Shown here: positions 10,967-37,139 of the stretch, piece by piece
Layout of the letters: each line of letters begins with the position of its first letter
How positions within the stretch are numbered: position 1 is the first letter of the stretch
Assembly (NCBI RefSeq): GCF_902713615.1
Contig: NW_024056015.1
Span: forward strand, 130,252 to 188,000
Source of the DNA: Scyliorhinus canicula
Taxonomy: Eukaryota
Reading direction: 5' to 3'
DNA length: 57,749 bases
Made by a program: the position numbers and the translations under genes
Notes under the pieces: model-generated
Database searches by the model: none
The model's input: the letters and a program-made list of their open reading frames with translations, nothing else
Told to the model about the DNA's origin: nothing

Positions 10967-11399
10967 ATGTGTTACACGGTGCAATTGAAGCTGCCTTTCA
11001 TTCTGGTGTTACTAGCTTGTAGGTGCTGGAAATGTACTTTCAAACCTGTGGAGAAATGTTATTTTTTATCGGTGTTACTCCAGTGTCTCATTGTATGAAT
11101 GTGTTCACAGGGCGATGTCGCTCGGAACAAGTTTTACAAAGTCCCATTGCAAGAACAGTTCAGAACGGGGATTTGGGGCAGCTAAACTGCAGCTACGACA
11201 TGTCCAACATATACGGAATGTATTGGTACAGACAAAAGTCCGGTAAGGGGCTGGAGTGGATAATAAGGCGAATATCGGCTGGAAAAGAGACAGGGGGTCG
11301 ATTCGAATTGGAACTTTCTACTGCGGATAAACGGGGCCAATTGGTTATTGAAAACACAGAGACTGCGGATACCGCTGTGTATTACTGTGCGATAGAGCC
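10967..11399 (+). CDS. Intact TCR alpha/delta-type V gene segment (leader exon 10967-11018, intron, V exon 11111-11399)
   Basis: Leader MCYTVQLKLPFILVLLA with a phase-1 GTAGGT donor and a CAG acceptor at 11110. Spliced V: W-RCRS-EQVLQSPIARTVQNGDLGQLNCSYDMSNIYGMYWYRQKSGKGLEWIIRRISAGKETGGRFELELSTADKRGQLVIENTETADTAVYYCAIE. Both Cys and the Trp are present with no stops. The 55-residue W-to-C span is TCR-alpha-like. Confidence 0.9.
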
Positions 11400-11437
11400 C
11401 ACATTGAGAGGAAATGTGCAGTCACTGTACAAAAACC
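11400..11437 (+). other. Recombination signal sequence (22-nt spacer) of the intact V
   Basis: CACATTG, agaggaaatgtgcagtcactgt, ACAAAAACC (consensus nonamer). Confidence 0.9.
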
Positions 11438-11694
11438 TCCACCCTCTTTACAATTGCCGCAGCAATCTAACAAGTAGCAAACCGCATGCCAAACGTGTGA
11501 GACGAGAGCAGGAAACGAGAGATGGGAGCGAGGCTCCCAGGCCATTACAATTTCCTTCTGCTTGCTGTTTTCTGTAAAGATACTGATAGTCAGAATATAC
11601 ATTATCCGATTGAACAAACAGTCACACAATGCATGCGGACTATCTGGTGAGAAAAATAGTCTGCACTGCTTAATTTTAAGCACGATCTCGAATC

Positions 11695-15475: not shown

Positions 15476-16576
15476 CGCTTGCCTAGAATAGCGCCATTTC
15501 AATAATACTCAAGTAGCTTCACACCATCTAAGATAAAACAGATTCATTGATTTGCGCTTCATCCATCATCTGAAACATTTACTCACAGCACCCACCAGTG
15601 CGATTGGCAGCAGGGCGCGCCATCTGCAAGATTCACAGCAGCAAATTACAAAGACACCTTTGTTAATACCTTCAAAAGCTGCCAACTCTACCAGCTCGAA
15701 AGACAAGGGCAACATACACATGTGAAGATTGCCATGTGGAGGTCTGCCTTTAGGTCGCACAGCATCCTGACTTGGAAATATGTCTCTGTTCTTTATGAGG
15801 GGAGGACGTGGTGAATTGAATTCCACCACGGCAGCTGGTGAAATTTATATTCAATAAAAATCTGGGATAGAAATGTATAATGACAACCACTAACCGTTGT
15901 CACTAATTCCCTTTAGAGAAGGAAATCTGTCATCCTTACCTGCTCTCCCACAGGAATGTGTTTGACACATAACTGATAATGGCAATAAATGTTGGCCCAG
16001 TATGGTCACATAAATACTGTCATGAGACAATATCCGGCTATTCCTTGAGCAGGCGCCCTAAATTACATCGATGTGACCGCTCAAAATGACCCACATTACC
16101 TTGTTGGGTGAAGTTCTCTTTCAGAGGGTCCAGAATTGATGGGACGAATGGTCTCCTTCTGCACTGTATGGATTCTATGATACGAAGATTCACCTGTAAA
16201 TATGCCTGATTCCTGACAGCGGTGTTTAAAAACATTGAAGGAGAAAATAAAGTTGCCAACTGAACCGTGAGTGTGATCTGACTGGAGTAACTGTTACTAC
16301 TATCCGAATAATAACGTGAATGGAATTCTGAAAAAAGGCAATAAAAACAGGAAAATGCCTCTGCTTCCGGGTCACACTAAGTCGGCATATGTTTGATCCG
16401 TACACCTAGACCGTAAACCTAGACACGGAAGGACAGCTAACCACCTTCCCGGTTCATTGGCGACAGAAGGAAGTAGATGAGAACATCCGGAGACAAGGCA
16501 GCAGATTATTCAGGGCGGGGATCAGATCGGCTGTCTTCAATTATCCAACTCCCGTTTCACAGAGCGCACAGCAACA

Positions 16577-17084
16577 ATGCGGCCACTCAGCATCTGGCTT
16601 CTGTGGGGAGCTCTTCTAACAGGTAATTTTGGAACTAACATCTTTCATGGTTTCCATCGTGTCTTCAGCATGGTATGAAATAAAATTTGAACAGCCGATT
16701 ATCATATCTGATCGGTTTTGATTTTCTTTCAGATCTGAGTCACGGAGATTCTGTCACTCAGCCGTTTTCCTCGGACGTTGAGACAGAAGGAGGAAGGGTG
16801 ACTTAAACCTGTACCTATGATACTGCATCGAGCACAGTATAAGCTTACTCTGGTACCGACAGCACCCAGACACACAGCCCACATATATAATCAGCAAAGA
16901 TTCTGATGATGATGAATATAAAGCAGATTTTGCTGAAGATCGTTTTCTCTGTGGATCTCCAGACCTCGAAGAAATTCATCAGTTGTAAGTATATCGAGGC
17001 TGAAGCTGACTGACACTGCCGTGTATTACTGCGCTTTCTGGGACACACAGTGATCAAAAGCAGCAGCATCCCTGTACAAAAACT
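16577..17084 (+). pseudogene. TCR alpha/delta V pseudogene with intact leader and near-consensus 23-RSS
   Basis: Leader MRPLSIWLLWGALLT (16577-16622, GTAATT donor). V exon 16733-17045: DLSHGDSVTQPFSSDVETEGGRVT*TCTYDTASSTV*../WYRQHPDTQPTYIISKDSDDDEYKADFAEDRF/SVDLQTSKKFIS/ISRLKLTDTAVYYCAFW, with stops and frameshifts. RSS is CACAGTG, 23 nt, ACAAAAACT (17046-17084). Confidence 0.92.
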
Positions 17085-18664
17085 GTAGGTGGAAACTGCA
17101 GTCTGTTGAAGCATGTGGAGGGCTCGCGGGCAGCTGCAGCCACAATGAGCAGCGGAGCTGTCAGCCACTCAGTCACCACACGGGAGAGGAAACCGCATCA
17201 ACTCCCATCAAACTGTCATCTAATTGTATCCAGCATGGGCTGAGAAACAAACTGATGATCCAATCCGACCAGCAGACATAGCAGAGAAACATAATTGAAT
17301 AGGCCCTTTCTAACCCGCACACCGTGTAATCTGCTGCGCTGTGAGGCCGGTCGTGGTGAGCTCCACATTCCCCCGGTCCAGCGGCAAACTCTCAGTCAAA
17401 CATGTATCTGCTCAATTTAGAGAAGCCGATCTACTAGTACTCGCTCTGTGTCTCTCAGAGCCCGTTGGCGAAGGGTAGAAAAGACAAAGGGGTGTCGTCA
17501 GTATCCCAGGTGGTGATGGTGGCATGTGTGTGGATGGGGAAGGGGTGGGGGTGGCAGCCTCCTGAATGATTCCTCTCTGCTACTGTGTGAGACGTCTGCT
17601 ACTGCAGATTGATTCCAAGGCTACTCCCTAAGCGTTGAATGCAGCCAGTCGCTGAGCTGATGCACTGAGAGAACCAGCACTCCGCTACACAGATACATTG
17701 ATGTAATATCCCATTCATTCAATCATTAGAATTCTCGTCTCCTATCGTTTTTTAAAATATTAAATTGTAGTTTGATTCTTTTATCTCACCGTTTTTCAGT
17801 TTATTTTCCAAATTATTTTGCCCAATCATTTATCGTCCTTTCCCCGTCTTCCCATTTCCTTCAACCAGTCCAATTTCCCCTGCCGACTCAGGACAATCTG
17901 CAATCTGTATCCTGTCACAGGCAATCTCCCTTCTTTCTGTCCCTGGGCATCCGTTCATCTCCTTTAACATGTGGACAACCAACCTACCCAGTCCATGTGC
18001 CAACACGGCAGCACAGTGGTTAGCACAGTTGCTTCACAGCGCCTTCTGCGCTGTGAATTCTATCTATGAAAAGGACCGTAAAGCATCATGTATTCCTTCA
18101 CAGCGGCTACACAGTAGCTGCATTGTGTAACATCGACGGGATGCACTGCAGCAACTCGCCAAGACATCTTCAACAGCACCTTCCATACCCGAGACCTCCG
18201 AGAATTACAACCACATGGAACTCTGCATAGAATACTCTGCATCCTCCTACTCATAACAGTTCTCTGGGGTAGAAATCTGCCTTGTGCACTAGCAAAGAAG
18301 AAGTGATATCTGAAATCTAATTCTGCTAACTGCACTGAAAATGGGTACCAAATGCTGCATAGCATACACTGTATACACTATAACACCCGTTTCGGGTTAT
18401 TGCCAGATACCGATTCTTTGTCCAAAACCTTATTGTTTCCATCTCAAAGACATGTGGAATAATGCGCCCACAATTCAAACAGAAGCATCACAGAAGTGCA
18501 TTAATAAACGTGATCAGATCTCGGAAAATAATAGGCAGATTCAGGGTCAAATATAGAATCCCTGCAGGTTAGAAGGCCATTTGGCTCATAGAGTCTGCAC
18601 TGACCTCGGAAAGATCACACTGCCCAATCCCCCACCCTTGCAACATGATCAGCGCATCATAGAT

Positions 18665-28873: not shown

Positions 28874-28881
28874 TATTTAAA
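28874..28881 (+). promoter_or_regulatory. TATA-like box of the IgM VH promoter
   Basis: TATTTAAA about 92 nt upstream of the leader ATG. There is no exact octamer in the preceding 500 bp. Confidence 0.5.
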
Positions 28882-28972
28882 TGCCGCTCACTGGGACCCG
28901 AATCCAACAGTCCGGGCGCTGGTTTGTTCACTGAGTTCCTGACACAACCATTTCCCCCAAATGGCCAGAAGG

Positions 28973-29018
28973 ATGAGGCTGGCCATTTCTCTCAGTTTGT
29001 TGCTGACTTTCTTATCCC
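28973..29018 (+). CDS. IGHV: IgM VH leader exon
   Basis: MRLAISLSLLLTFLS plus one C, followed by a GTGAGT donor (phase 1). Confidence 0.92.
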
Positions 29019-29042
29019 GTGAGTAGTTTTTATTGTCCAAGT

Positions 29043-29383
29043 GGGGGCAGCACGGTAGCATGGTGGTTAGCATAAATGCTTCACAGCTCCAGGGTCTCAG
29101 GTTCGATTCCCGGCTGGGTCACTGTCTGTGCGGAGTCTGCACGTCCTCCCCGTGTGTGCGTGGGTTTCCTCCGGGTGCTCCGGTTTCCTCCCACAGTCCA
29201 AAGACGTGCGGGTTAGGTGGATTGGCCATGCTAAATTGCCCGTAGTGTCCTAAAAAAGTAAGGTTTTGGGGGGGGGGGGTGTTGTGTTTTGGGTATAGGG
29301 TGGATACGTGGGTTTGAGTAGGGTGATCATTGCTCGGCACAGCATCGAGGGCCGAAGGGCCTGTTCTGTGCTGTATTGTTCTA
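29043..29383 (+). mobile_element. Full-length HE1 SINE inside the VH leader intron
   Basis: Near-consensus copy from ggggcagcacggtagc to gtgctgtattgttcta, with candidate TSD AAGT (29039-42 and 29383-86). Confidence 0.9.
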
Positions 29384-29476
29384 AGTCTCTCAGTGTTACT
29401 CTCTCTCTGGAATGTTCCAGAGTCACCAATCATTTCACCAGCATTAATCCTCGGGCTTTTTGATATATTTTTACAG

Positions 29477-29795
29477 GTGTCCAGTCGCAGGTTGTGTTGA
29501 CTCAGCCGGAGGCAGAGACCGGGCGTCCCGGAGGCTCCCTGACACTGACCTGTAAAACCAGCGGCTTCGACCTCAGCAGCCACAACACGTACTGGATCCG
29601 AAAATTTCCCGGACACGGGCTGGAGTGGCTGCTTAACTACATGAGTTCATCAGACAACAGCTACGCCCCAGCAATTAAAGATCGATTTACTGCGTCCAGG
29701 GACACTTCAAACAATATATTCTCTTTGTCCATGACGAACCTGAAGGTTGAAGACACCGCCATTTATTACTGTGCAAGCAGATCACTGCAGGGGCC
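29477..29795 (+). CDS. IGHV: IgM VH exon, open, with a long post-Cys extension (probable germline-joined D1)
   Basis: [106 protein letters not shown], a typical shark IgM VH framework. Confidence 0.95.
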
Positions 29796-29833
29796 CACAG
29801 TGCTGTGCTCAGCGACATCCTCATACAAAAATC
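29796..29833 (+). other. RSS with 22-nt spacer after VH(D1)
   Basis: CACAGTG, ctgtgctcagcgacatcctcat, ACAAAAATC. Confidence 0.92.
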
Positions 29834-30135
29834 TTCGAGAAAGAGTTTGTTCAGATGTGTGATCAGCGCCACAGCAGGGTTGTCAATGTAAATCAGGTTT
29901 AAAAAAAACAAAACATTAGTTTGTAAAAAGATGTAAAAGATCTTCCACTTTATCTCTGTTGACCGACACGCTAAATCTGCACAGATGGTTTAAAAGTGTT
30001 CCGATCCTCTTTATAAATGGAATGACCAGGACAAGCTGAAATAACTCACCCATTCGCTGTTGGAAGAGACAGAGTTCGGTTTTTGAGAGCGCAGTGAAAT
30101 TAAGTCTCTGTATTTTACAGTTAACAGTCTGCCGC

Positions 30136-30199
30136 AGTATTTGACACGCTGTGTCTCACTGTGATAACTAGCACAGCAGTTACTGTCAATACAAAAAGC
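30136..30199 (+). other. IGHD: DH segment (ATAACTAG, 30164-30171) with 12/12 RSS, D2-type
   Basis: 5' side: AGTATTTGA, 12 nt, CACTGTG. 3' side: CACAGCA, 12 nt, ACAAAAAGC. Confidence 0.9.
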
Positions 30200-30527
30200 C
30201 CCTCAGCACTAATTCACTGAGGCTGGCTCAGTGCCCTCTTTTACAATTTAAATGTATTTACAGTGAAGTATTATTTATTTCCATCACTGCCCAAATACAA
30301 AGAATGAACATGGAAAATCTGATAATTATTCATTAATCAGTGAGTGTTTTCAACAACATGTTCATGAAACACTACTCTGAAATATAAACCGGAAGGATAA
30401 TTTATGAAAAGCGAACGCTATCCACACATGTCATTATAATTTAACACAAATTCACCGTGACTTAACTTTGTCTCTGGGTTGTGAATATTAAAATAATGGC
30501 GGATTTCTGTCTATTTTGTGCAGATCC

Positions 30528-30614
30528 GGTTATTGCAAGGTGCAGCCCAGGGAATGAAACATTGTGGCGCCTTCGTATTCTGGGGAAAAGGAACCATGGT
30601 GACAGTGACTGCAG
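30528..30614 (+). CDS. IGHJ: JH segment (coding 30567-30614) with 23-RSS
   Basis: GGTTATTGC, 23 nt, CATTGTG, then AFVFWGKGTMVTVTA and a G|GTAAGA donor. Confidence 0.95.
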
Positions 30615-32504
30615 GTAAGAACCATTCAATAATTCACTAACTGATATATTTGAGTCTTTGTGTTATTTTCTTTCTATTTCAACAATTCATTCGTTCACTG
30701 AAATATTCTTTGGAGGACTCTGTATTGAGATTTTGTTGCAATGTTTCATGTGATTCTGCCGAAAAGGGTTATAGAATTACTGTGCCTGTTGACAAAGGTT
30801 TCTGCCGAGGGATTCAGTCCCTGGTTGTTGCGAGTTGATGTTTATTTGCTGAGGATACTGTGTGGTCGGGTTACTTTAAGTACCTACCGTCTATAAATCA
30901 GTATGACGTTCCTGTAATATTATATCTCGCTGACATTTAGTGGCTGTAAATTTCAGCTTCTAGTGCACAAGTAGTTGAAATCTAACTCAGTATTAACTTT
31001 CGGTTTAGTTTAACTATTCATTCACTTGATGACAGGGGGGTTTGGTGTGTTCCACATTGATGTTGTCTTGAAATGCTCTATGGTTTTGTTGAAAGTGTTT
31101 GTAGTATTGAGCTGCTTCTCCGTGAAACCAGTTTTAGTCCCTCGCTATGTGATTTGGTGTTTTACTGCTGAGCAGATTGTGTCTGGGTGACTTTGAATAA
31201 GGAAAATCTGTGAAACGGTTTGGCGTTTCTGCATTGTTTAACTCGGTCACATTGAGCGCTTACATGCTTTGTGGTTGAATACAAACAGTCTACGTGTTTG
31301 AATATGCTTCAAGCATGATTGCGGGCACCGACTTACAGATATTAGCGCATTTTTAATAAGTGGTGGTTGCAGATTTAACAAAGGCACGGTTTAAGACGCT
31401 CTTTCCGAACACAATTTCTTCCTGCAATAAGAGCTTAGCTTTTCTGTAATGTTTCATCCCGATGTCACCTGCTGTTTGCAGCTTTTACCATCTACTGCAA
31501 ACAAGAAGTGTCGAAATACGTTTCAAATATGGCCCAATACGAGTAAAATGTGGTGAAGTTTAAATATAATTTTTGGACCTATTGCACCGCCTTACAATGG
31601 TTTTGCTATTATTCCATATTTCTCTTTAGTTTGATACATTTGCTGGCGAGCTGATTTGCTGGATTCGATATTGAGATGTTTTTGAAATGATATGTTCGAT
31701 TGTGTTCAATGTAGAATTGAGCTGAAATGGGCTTCAGTCCCTTCGTGATGAGTTTTGGTGTTTTCCTGCTGAGGCGATTTTGTGTCTGGGTGACTTTCAA
31801 TAAGTCCAATTTGTGAAGTGGATTGGCTTACTGCATTGTTTCTGTATTGTTTATACTTGGTGGCATTAAGCGGTTACACGTATTCTGATTACATGCAACA
31901 GTCCACATGTTTGAATCTGCTTGAAACACGATTGTCGGGAGAATATACAGGTTTCGGAAATGAAGAAAGAAATTCTAGATATTTTGAGGCTTATTTAAAA
32001 TTTTAACTGTTCATTCTGGATTTAAGCAATCATTGGATTAATTCAGAACGCAATCAGTTACTGCAATCTCAAACTACTTAATTACAATGTTCCAATTGGA
32101 GAGTAACATTAATATAATTAAAATAATTATAATGCGGTAATATAACTCCATATTAACCATAGATGTTTCCATATTAATAACATTAATCACAATCGCCTTT
32201 CACAGATCTCCTGTGCTCTGTACACCATTAGTATCACCGGAAAAGTTTCTACGCTGGAAATGGTTTGTGATTATGCCCGGAAATGTTTTCATAATAACAT
32301 ACTGATTCTACAGCAGTGTTCTATTGCTCAATATATTTTGAATTAATTTTTATAATCCTGGTTATGTTTGTCAGTTGCTTAAATAGGAGTTTAACATTGC
32401 AGTTTGGCAATTTATGTATCCGGTTATTACATTTTTTTCTGTGCAGCCGCAACAGTATGATTTCTTCAATGTCATTTGTATTTGGATAGTGAGATAATTG
32501 TCAC

Positions 32505-33025
32505 TAATTGGATTGGATTTGTTTATTATCACGTGTACCCAGGTACAGTGAAAAGTTTTTTTCTGCAAGCAGCTCAACAGGTCATTCAGTACATGGGAAG
32601 AAAGGGGAATTAAACAAAATTCAAGAAAATACATAATAGGGCAACACAAGATATACAATGTAACTACATAAGCATTGGCATCGGATGAAGCATACAGGGT
32701 GTAGTGTTAATGAGGTCAGTCAATAAGAGCGTCATTTAGGAGTCTGGTGACAGAGGGGAAGAAGCTGTTTTTGAGTCTGTTCGTGCGTGTTCTCAGACTT
32801 CTGAATCTCCTGCCCGATGGAAGAAGTTGGAATAGTGAGTAAGCCGGGTGGGAGGGATCCTTGATTATGCTGCCCGCTTTCCCCCAGCAGCGGGAGGTGT
32901 AGATGGAGTCCACGGATTGGAGGCAGGTTTGTGTGATGGACTGGGCGGTATTCACGACTCTCTGAAGTTCCTTGCGGTCCTGGGCCGAGAAGTTGCCATA
33001 CCAGGCTGTGATGCAGCCCGATAAT
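32505..33025 (-). mobile_element. Rex1/Babar-like LINE 3' fragment
   Basis: IIKDPSHPAYSLFQLLPSGRRFRSLRTRTNRLKNSFFPSVTRLLN is a Rex1-type C-terminus. Confidence 0.65.
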
Positions 33026-33929
33026 TTAATAATAAACAGTTTTCTCAGAGGTGTAAATCTCTGGCAGTGAAGGAATTTTCTTCTGGTTTTATTTCAACTG
33101 TAGAAATGTTCAGATTGCACAGGGCGAGAGGTCGACAAGTAAAAGCTTGAAATTCAAAGAGATCAATATAATTACAAAAGGAGAATATTTACTGAGCAAT
33201 ATGTAATTGCAGAGCTGTGCTGTTTCCGAGATAGAATTAAAGAAAAAAAGACAAATGACACAATAGAAGAACAAATGATATCTGAACCTCATGTTTTTTT
33301 AAATTAAGTATTAAATTGAAGTAGAAAAGTTCTACTTCATTTGCTCATTATGTTTCAGTGTTGTAGACGATAAGAATGAATTGTTTTCACTATGTTTTAC
33401 ACTGATTAATTTGGATCTCCTTTCTTTAAGCAATAGTTTTAATAATTAACTTACAGGGATTGTCTGAGTTATGAACTCTCGGAAGCATTTTGACTAAGAA
33501 CAAACATCCAGGGACTTATTGATATATATAGTTTCGAGTTGCGACAGTTTATCAACCCGGAAGTGCCGCTTTAGCAAACAGATGATATACTATACATGTC
33601 TGTATGTTTCCATCCGGTTATTTTAAGTTTATTATTTAGCATTCCTGAAGATTTAATTAAACCAAATTATTTAACAAAGTTCCAGGTAGCAGAAGGATTT
33701 GAATTATAGAAAACTTTTTATTATCGTGTACTAATCAGCTAATAAGCCAACTAATTGACAATTAACAATAACTTGCAATACAACATCAGTACTAATTAAT
33801 TCAATATAAATAATCTCATCCAATTCAGTGGCACACTGGCGTTCAAAATATCAGAGCTAATAGAGAATATTTAATTAAATTGTCTCGAAAATGAATTCAG
33901 TAAACAATGTATTTCTGTTTTTCGTGAAA

Positions 33930-35460
33930 ATATTTTATTAAAGCATTAATCATTTTTGACAACAATTTTCAAGAGGAAAAACAACAAAGTAAATAACACC
34001 CACCCAACAAACAACCAGACCCAGCCAACATGTCTTACATGCACAGTTCCCCAGTCCCCCTTTCCCACCTTTGCCACCTCAACCAATCCCCCCTACCTCC
34101 CTCTTCCCCTTAGCCCCTCTCCCCCTTTGTATCCGCTGACAAATCCCCAATAGGTCAATAAACGGCTGCCACCTCCAGGCAAACCCTAGCATCGATCCTC
34201 TCGGGGCGAACTTGATCTTCTGAAGCCTGAGAAATCCGGCCATGTCACTGACCCATACCGTCTCCGGGCTACCAGGGAAGCAAAGGCCAACACATCATCC
34301 TCTCTCGCCCCCTGGACTCGCGGGTCTTCTGACACACCAAAAATCGCCACCGATACCTTTAATTCCGTGGACATGACATCGGCAAACATTTGCCAGAATA
34401 CCTTAAGCTTCGGACATGCCCAAAACATATGGACATGATTTGCGGCCGCCCCCTCACCACCCGCCACACCCCTCCCCCCTTTCTGCACACCGCCCACACG
34501 TATCCTCCACCCTTTTAAAGAACCTGCTCATACGTGCCGCAATCATATGCGCCCTGTGGACGGCCTTGAATTGTTTGAGGCTAAGGCTGTCACACGACGA
34601 AGACGCGTTAACCCTACTCAAGGCATTGGCCCACAATCCCGCCTCTAACACCTTGCCCAACGCTTCCTCCCATTTTCGCTTTACCTCCCCTATCAGGGTT
34701 TACTATTCCATGAACTCTTTATAAATTTCGAGACCTTCCACCCCCACTCTCGTGGGGACACCACCTACTGTATCCCCTGAAGCGGAATGTGCTGAAAGGT
34801 CGAAACCTGACTCCGTACAAAATCACTCACCTGCAGGTAGCTGAACCCATTCCCCCCGGGCAGCTCAAACTCCTCCTGCAAGTTCTCCAAGCACGGAAAG
34901 TTGCCGTCAATAAACAGCTCCCTGAACCTCTCAATCCCTGTTCGCTGCCACATCCAAATCCCCCCCCCCCCCCCCCACCCCGGCACAAACCGGTGATTGC
35001 CACAATTTGTTGCCCATACCGACGCCCCCTCCACTCCCATTGCTTCCGCCACAGTCCCCACATCCTCAAAGCTCCTCAAAGGTCCAAAGATGTGCGGGTT
35101 AGGTGGATTGGCCATGCTAAATTGCCCGTAGTGTCCTAAAAAAGTAAGGTTAAGGGGGGGGGGGGGTTGTTGGGTTACGGGTATAGGGTGGATACGTGGG
35201 TTTGAGTAGGGTGATCATTGCTCGGCACAACATCGAGGGCCGAAGGGCCTGTTCTGTGCTGTACCGTTCTATGTTCTAAAGCCGCCACTACCACTGGGCT
35301 TGTGGAGTACCAAGCCGGCGAAAACAGCAGAGATGCCATTACCAGTGCCCCTGAAATTGTGTCCCGACATGATGACATCTCCACCCGCTCCGACACCGAC
35401 CCCTCCCTCACTATCCATTTCCTGATCATTGAATCTATGTCACGGACAAAATACCCTTAA
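33930..35460 (-). mobile_element. L1/Tx1-clade LINE 3' fragment with a 5'-truncated HE1 SINE (~35076-35277) inside it
   Basis: QFKAVHRAHM..RMSRFF..VEDTCGRC and ANHVHMFWACPKL (CCHC region), with a poly-A end near 33930. L1 sequence resumes after the SINE. Confidence 0.85.
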
Positions 35461-37139
35461 TGTCTTATATTTGATGTGTTCATTCTCAGCGAAAATACAT
35501 TTTACACCGTTCAGATAGACAGTAAGAAATAGTTGAAAGGCGCCGTTCAGATAGACAGAAATAAATACTTGAAAGGCGACGTGACGTTTGAAACGAATAT
35601 CAGTTTAATTTGAAGGAGGTTATGGAATAGCTGTTGTCGAAAGTTGTCAATTTATCAATTAGAATCAAACAGTTTGAATTATTAATTCTCTTGTATGTCA
35701 GGGAGTGAAATTGGACTTATTTCATTTTAAAAACCTGTACCTGTGAGAAATATGGAAGTTTGACTTTACGTTTGAGGAGGCCCCTCAGAACTGAGATCCT
35801 TCCCGCAGATTGCGACAGGCAGGAAGAAAAAAATCAGAAATGCCAGACAAACTGGAGAAGATTCGGTTGCTTACTAACCAGTGATGTATCTGCCCTGGGA
35901 ATGTTAAATTTGGTAATGCAGAGAGATTTATTCTCTTTTAATCCGAGCTGTACCAGTCCTTGACCTAATTAATGGGACAGTGAAGAGGGAAAAAATGGTC
36001 TGTACTTTATTTTTAATCTTACTGAGCGATGTTCGAGTCGCTGGTTAGGCCAGCATTTATTATCTCCGTTTAATTGTCCCTTGAGAAAATTTGGTGAATC
36101 TTTCTTGCATCGCTGCAGTTTATGTGGTGTAGGTACACCCGCAGTGCAGTTGGGGAAGGATTTCCAGTCCACAGTGAAGGAACAGCAGTATAGTTTCAAG
36201 TCAGGATGGTGTGTGCTTTGGAAGAAATACGCAGGTCGTGGTGTTCCTATCCATCTGCAGCCATTGTCCTTCTAGGTGGTAGAGGTTGCAGATTTGGAAG
36301 TTGCTTTCTGTGGACTCTTTGAGAGTTCCTGCAGTGCATCTTGTATATCATACACACTGCTACCTCTGTTGGCGGGGTTGGAGGGAATGAATGTTTAAGA
36401 TGGTGAATGGGGGCTCATTTGGCCGGCGGCTTTTTCCTGGCCAGTGTTGAATTTCTTGAGCATTTTTCGAATTTCACTCATTCAGACAAGTCTAAGTCAT
36501 TCAATCACACACCGTACTTCTAGATGACGAAATGTCTTTCGGCGATTGTGGTTGAATTACTTGACACAGGATTCCTTGGCTCTGACCGGCTGTGATAGCT
36601 AGAGCAGTTATATCCAAACTGTATCGAACTCTTCCGTGGGCATACTTGATGGGATAATGTAGAAGATGTTTTATTTTAAACCAGTTTTGGGCCTCCATCT
36701 TGGCAGTCGGAGACAGGAGATTTGTGGGGATTTTACTTTGTATATTAGTTTGTCGCGTGCCCGACCTGAGAGCCTTTTCCTCGCAATTTTGCTCCAGGTG
36801 CTACGGTTTCCTCCAACGGTCCAAAGACGTGCAGGTTAGGTGGATTGGACATCCTGAATTGCCCTTAGTGTTCAAAAATGTTAGGTGGGGTAACTAAGTG
36901 ACTGGGTTAGGGTGGAGGTGTGGGATTAAGTAGGGTGCTCTTTCCGAGGGCAGGTACAGACTGGGCGGGCTGAATGGCCTCCCTCTGCACTGTAAATTCG
37001 ATGATTCTGTGAAAGGCTTAAGTGATTGTCCAACCGTAACCCGCGAGTCGCATTGTGCTCAAGTGGTCACCACACTCAGTGTCGGAGTGGATGGGAATGT
37101 GTGTGGAGTGTGAGGGCGAAATAGAAGATGGAGACTGCG

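What the first reader, a model, noticed from the sequence alone, without database searches (positions are those of the whole stretch)
29770..30199. VH looks germline-prejoined to D1 (VD-D-J cluster)
Seen: 23 nt (GCAAGCAGATCACTGCAGGGGCC) lie between the Cys codon and the heptamer, much longer than the usual ~8 nt V end. Only one D (12/12, D2-type) is present between V and J, with ~300 and ~330 bp spacers, so one V-D1 interval is missing. Established: shark clusters normally have D1 (12/22) and D2 (12/12), and germline-joined VD, VDD and VDDJ genes exist in cartilaginous fish. Inference: V was joined to D1 in the germline. ACTGCAGGGG would be the D1 remnant, CAGATC would be junctional, and the 22-RSS would be D1's 3' RSS. 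This fixes the first part of CDR3 while leaving two joins.
Basis: partly seen in the sequence, partly recalled or inferred. Interest (0 to 1): 0.7.

Follow-up and report, generated by a model that had tools for sequence, protein, structure and literature searches.

The report
Shark IgM gene with pre-joined V-D1
In this catshark antibody (IgM) heavy-chain mini-gene the V segment is already fused to the first of the two D segments in inherited DNA, and the gene still finishes its rearrangement and is expressed. It is a well-supported new example of a kind of shark gene known since the 1980s.

Summary

- **Layout.** 23 nt separate the Cys codon (29770-72) from a CACAGTG heptamer (29796). Its signal has a 22-nt spacer. 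Only one D (12/12 signals) lies before J.
- **Cross-species test.** A canonical V-D1-D2-J cluster of the bamboo shark (L001) aligns to the window V. The alignment then jumps about 430 bp (V signal, V-D1 interval, D1 5' signal) and resumes inside D1. It continues through the D1 3' signal, which is 34/38 identical (spacer 19/22), and the D1-D2 interval (z 65.6). The V 3' flank gives z 0.0.
- **Same species.** A contig from an independent DNA run carries a canonical D1 (CACTGTG-ACTACAGTGGGT) directly in front of this same signal.
- **Germline status.** A 236-nt contig from that independent DNA sample bridges the junction without a mismatch, at the same low depth as neighbouring exact contigs.
- **Expression.** One RNA contig reads V-D1 untrimmed, then GACTA, this J and Cmu1, in frame. 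So the gene rearranges and is expressed.

Germline VD- and VDD-joined shark heavy-chain genes are already in the literature. This scan had already noted VDJ-joined and V-DD-J clusters elsewhere in this genome. This is a new member of a known kind, of modest interest.

The parts
28874..28882 (+). TATA-like box (TATTTAAAT) of the VH promoter
   Evidence: Promoter and leader align to the bamboo-shark cluster L001 at 67% over 356 nt. The aligned TATA there reads CATATAAAT.
28961..29018 (+). Leader exon (MARRMRLAISLSLLLTFLS, plus 1 nt of the next codon), donor GT at 29019
   Evidence: Read. Homologous to the L001 leader. RNA contigs splice the shared leader end (TTGCTGACTTTCTTATCCC) onto 29477 (X8 loose end).
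29043..29362 (.). About 320-nt SINE-like insertion in the leader intron (approximate ends)
   Evidence: The alignment to the L001 leader intron breaks at about 29042 and resumes at about 29362. The tRNA-derived repeat sequence is visible.
29477..29777 (+). V-derived part of the VH exon (open frame, V-set domain), through Cys 29770-72 and GCAAG
   Evidence: translation; V-set, E 1.4e-16; 75% identity to catshark and bamboo-shark VH; aligns to the L001 V up to 29785.
29778..29783 (+). Junctional letters CAGATC between the V end and the D1 remnant; origin inferred (N/P or part of the V end)
   Evidence: Inference from the sequence. These letters match neither the canonical V end (TGTGCAAGAGAC in L001) nor the canonical D1.
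29784..29795 (+). D1 remnant ACTGCAGGGGCC, fused in frame to V
   Evidence: 8/12 identical, without gaps, to the same-species canonical D1 ACTACAGTGGGT (loose end before 29796). The L001 D1 alignment starts at 29784.
29796..29833 (+). D1-type 3' recombination signal: CACAGTG, 22-nt spacer, ACAAAAATC
   Evidence: 34/38 identical to the L001 D1 3' signal, spacer 19/22, against 5/22 to the L001 V spacer; the core CGACATCCTCAT is unique in the window and shared with the nurse-shark RSS-D1 primer.
29834..30135 (+). D1-D2 intersegment DNA, including a heptamer-only D-like relic at 29855-29876
   Evidence: homologous to the L001 D1-D2 interval; global alignment shown. (the relic resembles the D2 element).
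30136..30199 (+). D2 element: 12-spacer signal, coding ATAACTAG (30164-71), 12-spacer signal with heptamer CACAGCA
   Evidence: The 3' signal translates to QQLLSIQKAPQH, identical to the tail of the S. torazame protein P0001. Paralogues carry a longer D2, about ATAACTGGGG (tables 3 and 4).
30528..30614 (+). JH with its 23-spacer signal (nonamer 30528-36, heptamer 30560-66), coding 30567-30614 (AFVFWGKGTMVTVTA), donor GT at 30615
   Evidence: Aligns to the L001 D2-J region. Spliced to Cmu1 in RNA.
44113..48276 (+). Cmu1 to Cmu4 exons with the secretory tail (about 44113-44430, 44610-44940, 45560-45870, 47890-48276; inner exon ends approximate)
   Evidence: open frames; tail ...[20 protein letters not shown]; four C1-set domains; acceptor AG, exon start TGACACCG at 44113.

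Best explanation
This is an IgM heavy-chain mini-locus of a catshark in the configuration VD1-D2-J-Cmu.

**Origin (inferred).** In an ancestor's germ line a RAG-type recombination joined the V coding end to the 5' end of D1. It excised the V 23-spacer signal, the V-D1 interval of about 400 bp and the D1 5' 12-spacer signal. The RAG origin is inferred from the precision of the cut.

**What is left (shown).** The fused exon ends ...C-A-S-R-S-L-Q-G-P and is flanked by D1's own 3' signal with a 22-nt spacer.

**How it works now.** In lymphocytes two joins remain. VD1 (22-nt spacer) joins D2 (12), and D2 (12) joins J (23). The 12/23 rule forbids skipping D2. The first 8 residues of CDR3 are therefore hard-wired, and diversity comes only from the D2 junctions. 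D2 here is short (ATAACTAG), and an untrimmed join would give an in-frame TAA stop. Productive genes therefore need trimming or added letters. The one transcript seen fits this: V-D1 is untrimmed, followed by GACTA and this J, in frame and spliced to Cmu1.
For: **Deletion at the expected place.** The canonical bamboo-shark cluster L001 aligns to the window V up to 29785. The alignment then skips L001 10487-10913 and resumes at window 29784, inside D1, running on to D2 and J.

**Flank identity.** The flank behind the heptamer scores 92 (z 65.6) against the L001 D1 3' flank and 11 (z 0.0) against its V 3' flank. The signal is 34/38 identical to the L001 D1 3' signal, with the spacer at 19/22 against 5/22 for the V spacer. 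The spacer core matches the nurse-shark 'RSS-D1' primer site.

**Same species.** A DNA contig matching the window from 29796 onward carries ...CACTGTG-ACTACAGTGGGT just before it. That is a canonical D1 with its 5' heptamer (table 7). A 540-nt contig of run X15 shows the same layout: 90 nt unlike the window precede position 29796 (record 14).

**Germ line.** X5 record 16 (a different sample and study from the best holder) covers 29722-29957 with 0 mismatches at depth 5.7. Other exact contigs of that run have depth 5.1 (table 8).

**Function.** The reading frame is open. Promoter and leader are conserved. X8 record 29 (151 nt) reads 29706-29795 exactly, then GACTA, then J 30567-30614, then TGACACCG, which is the start of Cmu1 at 44113. 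This gives [26 protein letters not shown].

**Other stages of joining in related sharks.** L002 and L003 are VDD-J, L004 is VDJ, and S. torazame P0001 reads through into the D2 3' signal.
Against: - The unjoined reference for the V 3' flank comes from another order of sharks. No same-species V 3' flank was retrieved.
- The D1 remnant matches the canonical D1 at only 8 of 12 letters, which alone would be weak.
- Run and sample identities are coded and the tissue of the DNA samples is unknown. 'Independent individual' is therefore inferred from different samples, studies and years.
- Expression rests on one 151-nt contig at depth 2.2.
- That RAG made the joint is inferred from the precision of the excision and is not shown.
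- No orthologous joint was resolved in the related species (X12).
Confidence: 0.93

Rival explanations
1. D1 was simply deleted. The signal next to V is V's own 23-type signal, and the long V end is an unusual V coding end.
For: A V signal and a D1 3' signal both have a long spacer. The layout V(22/23)-(12)D(12)-(23)J is therefore legal either way.
Against: The spacer and 360 bp of flank match the D1 3' flank (z 65.6) and not the V 3' flank (z 0.0). Spacer identity is 19/22 against 5/22. Same-species contigs put a canonical D1 in front of this signal. A D1-like 12-mer sits at the coding end.
Confidence: 0.01
2. The joint is somatic (lymphocyte DNA in the sequenced tissue) or an assembly chimera between two clusters.
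For: VD-D-J is a common somatic intermediate in nurse-shark lymphocytes and thymocytes (PMC2435157).
Against: A short-read contig from another sample and study bridges the joint over 236 nt with 0 mismatches, at the depth of neighbouring exact contigs (records 16 and 23). An RNA contig from a third sample has the identical 23-nt junction (record 29). Independent somatic joints would not repeat the same junction letters.
Confidence: 0.02
3. The deletion was not made by RAG. It was an ordinary deletion or replication slip that happened to remove the DNA between the V end and D1.
For: No direct evidence of RAG action can be had from sequence. The six junction letters cannot be assigned with certainty.
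Against: Both signals that faced each other are removed cleanly. The D1 coding end is kept at full length (12 nt) and the V coding end up to GCAAG. A few unassignable letters lie between them, as at a coding joint. Another scan note describes a non-RAG-like D1-D2 deletion in this genome that left a stranded heptamer. No such relic is present here.
Confidence: 0.04
4. The joint did not arise in this cluster. It was imported by recombination or gene conversion from another cluster that was already joined (VD-, VDD- or VDJ-type).
For: Joined clusters of several stages exist in this species and its relatives. The D1-D2 interval is about 89-96% identical to paralogues (record 14). The V is much more divergent, at 75% protein identity to the best hits, which come from other shark species.
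Against: Nothing speaks directly against it. It changes only the history, not what the gene is now. The D1 remnant differs from the canonical D1 at 4 of 12 letters, which fits an old joint that has since diverged on its own.
Confidence: 0.1

Closest known systems
Germline partially joined IgM heavy-chain clusters of the horned shark, Heterodontus francisci (Kokubu et al. 1988, as cited in PMC2193156 and the reviews PMC5192425 and PMC4279169)
   Same: Cluster-type IgM gene in which V is fused to D in inherited DNA, while later segments stay split and keep their signals. Lee et al. [quoted passage not shown]
   Different: A different species and order. Here only D1 is fused (VD-D-J), whereas the reviews list mostly VD-J, VD-DJ and VDJ. 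Expression of horned-shark joined H genes was not detected (PMC2193156), whereas one spliced in-frame transcript is seen here. The original paper could not be read.
Somatic VD-D-J intermediates of nurse-shark IgM Group 2 genes (Malecek et al. 2008, PMC2435157)
   Same: The same product: V joined to D1, with the D1 3' signal, D2 and J untouched. The D1 3' spacer motif is shared (primer RSS-D1).
   Different: Those arise in lymphocytes and thymocytes and differ from cell to cell. This one is inherited and identical across samples.
Fully germline-joined IgM (nurse shark IgM1gj) and the VDJ-joined and V-DD-J clusters noted by this scan elsewhere in the same genome
   Same: The same phenomenon: signals removed in the germ line within an IgM mini-locus. 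Some of these also lie beside TCR-type V genes.
   Different: Those have no joins left (VDJ) or a different first join (D1-D2). This gene keeps two joins and so keeps junctional diversity in the second half of CDR3.
VDD-J and VDJ genes in the bamboo shark (L002, L003), the whale shark (L004) and S. torazame (P0001)
   Same: VH of the same family with D1-derived letters fused behind the Cys (ACTACAGT in L003, CAGTGGG in L002).
   Different: They went one or two joins further. Their flanking signal is the D2 3' 12-spacer signal, or none at all.
Chicken VH pseudogenes (germline VD fusions)
   Same: V fused to D in the germ line, as discussed in PMC2193156.
   Different: Those are donor pseudogenes for gene conversion, without signals, leader or a C region of their own. 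This is a complete, transcribed cluster.

Membership tests
Cartilaginous-fish IgM heavy-chain cluster | Leader, VH, D, JH and four Cmu exons with an IgM-type secretory tail, in one orientation within about 20 kb | tested here: met
   There is one V-set domain and four C1-set domains. The tail is ...[21 protein letters not shown] is spliced to Cmu1 in RNA. The span is 28961-48276, with a repeat-rich J-Cmu1 intron of 13.5 kb.
Germline VD-joined (VD-D-J) cluster | The V signal, the V-D1 interval and the D1 5' signal are absent, while both coding ends are kept | tested here: met
   L001 10487-10913 has no counterpart in the window. V aligns up to 29785 and D1 from 29784. One search gives the canonical D1 of the same species for comparison.
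Germline VD-joined (VD-D-J) cluster | The signal at the fused coding end is D1's 3' signal (22-nt spacer), followed by D1-D2 intersegment DNA | tested here: met
   z 65.6 against 0.0; 34/38; spacer 19/22 against 5/22; nurse-shark RSS-D1 core; same-species contigs.
Germline VD-joined (VD-D-J) cluster | The joint is inherited: present in non-lymphoid DNA and identical between individuals | tested here: met
   An exact 236-nt DNA contig from another sample and study lies at the same low depth as other exact contigs of that run. An RNA contig of a third sample has the identical junction. Caveat: the tissue and the identity of the animals are coded, so non-lymphoid origin is not shown directly.
Germline VD-joined (VD-D-J) cluster | The remaining segments keep signals that obey the 12/23 rule | tested here: met
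   The layout is VD1(22)-(12)D2(12)-(23)J. The D2 3' heptamer is CACAGCA. The same heptamer is implied in S. torazame P0001, whose tail QQLLSIQKAPQH back-translates to it.
Functional (not pseudogene) joined cluster | Open frame through the joint, and a rearranged, spliced, in-frame transcript | tested here: met
   Support is one 151-nt contig at depth 2.2. The V-exon words in further RNA-like runs were not checked for specificity.
RAG-made germline joint (Lee et al. 2000 model) | Junction features of a coding joint relative to the closest unjoined relative (trimming, P or N letters) | tested here: inconclusive
   The breakpoints sit at the heptamer borders. The six letters CAGATC cannot be assigned, because the closest unjoined relative in this genome was not available.

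The most novel reading that the evidence does not exclude
The VD1 joint may be old and kept by selection as a semi-invariant IgM gene with CDR3 always starting ASRSLQGP. The gene sits directly downstream of TCR alpha/delta-type V segments. Its long-spacer signal could also pair with the 12-spacer signals of TCR delta D segments, which would give chimeric VH-D1/TCR-delta chains. That would make it a specialised receptor gene rather than a by-product of germ-line RAG activity.
Probability: 0.08. Interest if true: 0.6.

Novelty: new member of a known kind. Interest (0 to 1): 0.3.

Why it matters
Germline-joined shark antibody genes are the standard evidence that the V(D)J recombinase has acted in germ cells and reshaped antigen-receptor loci. 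A VD-D-J gene is the earliest stage of that process. It shows that the first join can be V to D1, which is not the D-to-J-first order of mammals. This gene also still completes rearrangement and makes an in-frame IgM message, so it fixes half of CDR3 without giving up diversity. Together with the V-DD-J and VDJ clusters noted elsewhere in this genome, it would allow a whole-genome census of joining stages in one species. None of this changes current understanding. It adds a clean, well-documented case.

Tried and rejected
- **S. torazame locus.** The DNA for the best protein hit (P0001) could not be fetched because the file is too large. Only its protein tail was used.
- **No catshark VH with DNA.** The protein search returned no VH from the window's own species, and the only catshark hits (S. 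torazame) gave no usable DNA. The unjoined reference cluster is therefore from the bamboo shark.
- **Nurse-shark primer.** The whole RSS-D1 primer does not match the window within 3 mismatches. Only its 12-nt core does.
- **Kokubu et al. 1988.** The paper is not held, and PMC2191167 holds no body text. What the horned-shark 'VD' genes look like is taken second-hand from PMC2193156.
- **Related species.** The contigs of organism B (X12) did not resolve whether an orthologous joint exists.
- **RNA-run search.** The V exon search listed small shares only, apart from one study. No further laying was possible, so breadth of expression is open.
- **Earlier findings.** A search by words for D1/D2/RSS came back blank at first.
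- **Explanations rejected.** These were a second hidden functional D in the V-D interval, simple loss of D1, and a somatic or assembly origin. The relic at 29855-76 has heptamers only and is conserved as part of the D1-D2 interval. The reasons for the other two are given under the rival explanations.

Full report
**What is in the sequence**

The flagged stretch is the 3' end of an immunoglobulin VH exon (29477-29795). It translates without a stop to a typical shark IgM V domain. It is 75% identical to VH genes of Scyliorhinus torazame and Chiloscyllium punctatum.

The parts of the gene are as follows:
- **Leader.** The leader exon is at 28961-29018, behind a TATA-like box. Promoter and leader are both homologous to a bamboo-shark cluster.
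- **Leader intron.** It carries a repeat insertion of about 320 nt.
- **V end.** After the Cys codon (29770-72) come exactly 23 nt, then CACAGTG, a 22-nt spacer and ACAAAAATC.
- **D.** One D (ATAACTAG, 30164-71), with 12-spacer signals on both sides, lies 302 bp further on.
- **J.** A JH (30567-30614, ...WGKGTMVTVTA) with a 23-spacer signal follows after another 328 bp.
- **Constant region.** Four Cmu exons with an IgM secretory tail lie at 44113-48276.

The only addition is a heptamer-only D-like relic at 29855-76. It also occurs at the homologous place in the bamboo-shark D1-D2 interval.

**Test of the interpretation across species**

A canonical V-D1-D2-J cluster of C. punctatum (L001) gives three collinear blastn blocks:
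- window 29400-29785 matches the L001 V (80% identity);
- window 29784-30196 matches L001 from inside D1, through the D1 3' signal and the D1-D2 interval, to D2 (E 4e-41);
- window 30375-30622 matches the L001 D2-J region.

L001 10487-10913 has no counterpart in the window. That stretch holds the V signal, the V-D1 interval and the D1 5' signal.

Taken alone, the 361 nt behind the coding end score 92 against the L001 D1 3' flank (z 65.6 over shuffles). They score 11 against its V 3' flank (z 0.0). The signal is 34/38 identical to the L001 D1 3' signal. The spacer is 19/22 identical, against 5/22 for the L001 V spacer. The spacer core CGACATCCTCAT occurs once in the window. It is also contained in the reverse complement of the published nurse-shark primer 'RSS-D1', which targets sequence 3' of D1 (PMC2435157).

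**Test within the species**

I laid public contigs on 29400-30700. Many paralogous contigs at 90% identity or more cover the signal and the D1-D2 interval.
- One DNA contig that matches from 29796 rightward has, just to its left, ...GTCTGT-CACTGTG-ACTACAGTGGGT. That is a canonical D1 with its 5' heptamer.
- A 540-nt contig of another run has the same layout.

The same-species counterpart of this flank therefore lies 3' of D1. The window's last 12 coding letters (ACTGCAGGGGCC) match that D1 at 8 of 12 positions without a gap. Between them and the V end (TGTGCAAG) lie six letters (CAGATC) of uncertain origin.

**Germ line or soma**

A 236-nt contig from a DNA run of another sample and study (X5, record 16) spans 29722-29957 with no mismatch. 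Its depth is 5.7, like other exact contigs of that run (5.1). An RNA contig from a third sample carries the identical 23-nt junction. Independent somatic joints would not repeat the same letters. The joint is therefore inherited. The tissue of origin is not known to me, and that remains a caveat.

**How it works**

The 12/23 rule leaves one path: VD1 (22-nt spacer) joins D2 (12), and D2 (12) joins J (23). CDR3 therefore starts with the fixed residues ASRSLQGP.

An untrimmed VD1+D2+J would read ...QGP-stop. This D2 is 2 nt shorter than the paralogous D2, which reads about ATAACTGGGG. Productive joins therefore need trimming or added letters.

One 151-nt contig in an RNA-like run (X8, record 29) shows such a product. 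It reads 29706-29795 exactly, then GACTA (ACTA can come from D2), then J from its first letter, then TGACACCG. That last stretch is the start of Cmu1 at 44113. The product reads [26 protein letters not shown], in frame and spliced. The same run also shows leader-to-V splicing. Expression is therefore shown, but by a single low-depth contig. V-exon words occur in four more runs of that study, which I could not check further.

**Comparison with what is known**

- Germline-joined heavy-chain clusters are a long-known peculiarity of cartilaginous fish (reviews PMC5192425 and PMC4279169).
- VD-D-J is also a frequent somatic intermediate in the nurse shark (PMC2435157).
- In my own comparison set, two bamboo-shark genes are VDD-J and a whale-shark gene is VDJ. 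A S. torazame 'hypothetical protein' reads through into the D2 3' signal.
- Earlier notes of this scan report VDJ-joined and V-DD-J clusters elsewhere in this genome, and name it as the small-spotted catshark. I did not verify the species myself.
- The position of IgM clusters beside TCR alpha/delta V genes is published (PMC12227049).

**Verdict**

The gene is a new, well-documented member of a known kind, and interest is modest. Four questions remain open:
- the origin of the six junction letters;
- the age of the joint;
- whether it is fixed in the population;
- how much the gene contributes to the repertoire.

Noticed in passing
window 11110-11440 and 16568-17085: Two TCR alpha/delta-type V segments lie upstream of the IgM cluster on the same strand. 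The first is open (V-set domain, ...YYCAIEP, then CACATTG, a long spacer and ACAAAAACC). The second has stop codons and is a pseudogene, but keeps a perfect signal with a 23-nt spacer.
   Followed up: partly
window 29043-29362: A SINE-like insertion of about 320 nt sits in the leader intron. It stretches the intron from about 127 nt in the bamboo-shark cluster to 458 nt. RNA contigs still show leader-to-V splicing, although those contigs may come from paralogues.
   Followed up: partly
window 29855-29897; L001 about 10985-11020: A D-like relic (ATGTGTG / ATCAGCGC / CACAGCA plus a 12-nt stretch) lies just behind the D1 3' nonamer. It resembles the D2 element and its 3' signal. A degenerate counterpart lies at the same place in the bamboo shark. 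It may be the trace of an old D duplication.
   Followed up: partly
window 30164-30171: The D2 of this cluster (ATAACTAG) is 2 nt shorter than the D2 of paralogous clusters (about ATAACTGGGG, from contig differences). It has stop codons in two of three frames, and the untrimmed VD1-D2 join is a stop.
   Followed up: partly
window 29778 to 30580 (joint seen in DNA run X5): A DNA contig at depth 12.4 joins a paralogous V end to a paralogous J, with 17 letters between them (TCCGGGGGTCTGGACTA). It is most likely a germline VDJ-joined paralogue in the same species.
   Followed up: no
L002 5655-5760, L003 4430-4540, L004 4465-4560; protein P0001: Public annotations hide joined genes as 'hypothetical proteins'. 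Two bamboo-shark genes are VDD-J, a whale-shark gene is VDJ, and the S. torazame protein scyTo_0022151 is translated through the D2 3' signal.
   Followed up: partly
window 30615-44112: The J-Cmu1 intron is 13.5 kb. It is filled with LINE-like open-frame fragments (about 34-35 kb) and long CA/CT-rich simple repeats (about 37-42 kb). Another reader flagged an AGCT-dense array at 43210-43613.
   Followed up: no
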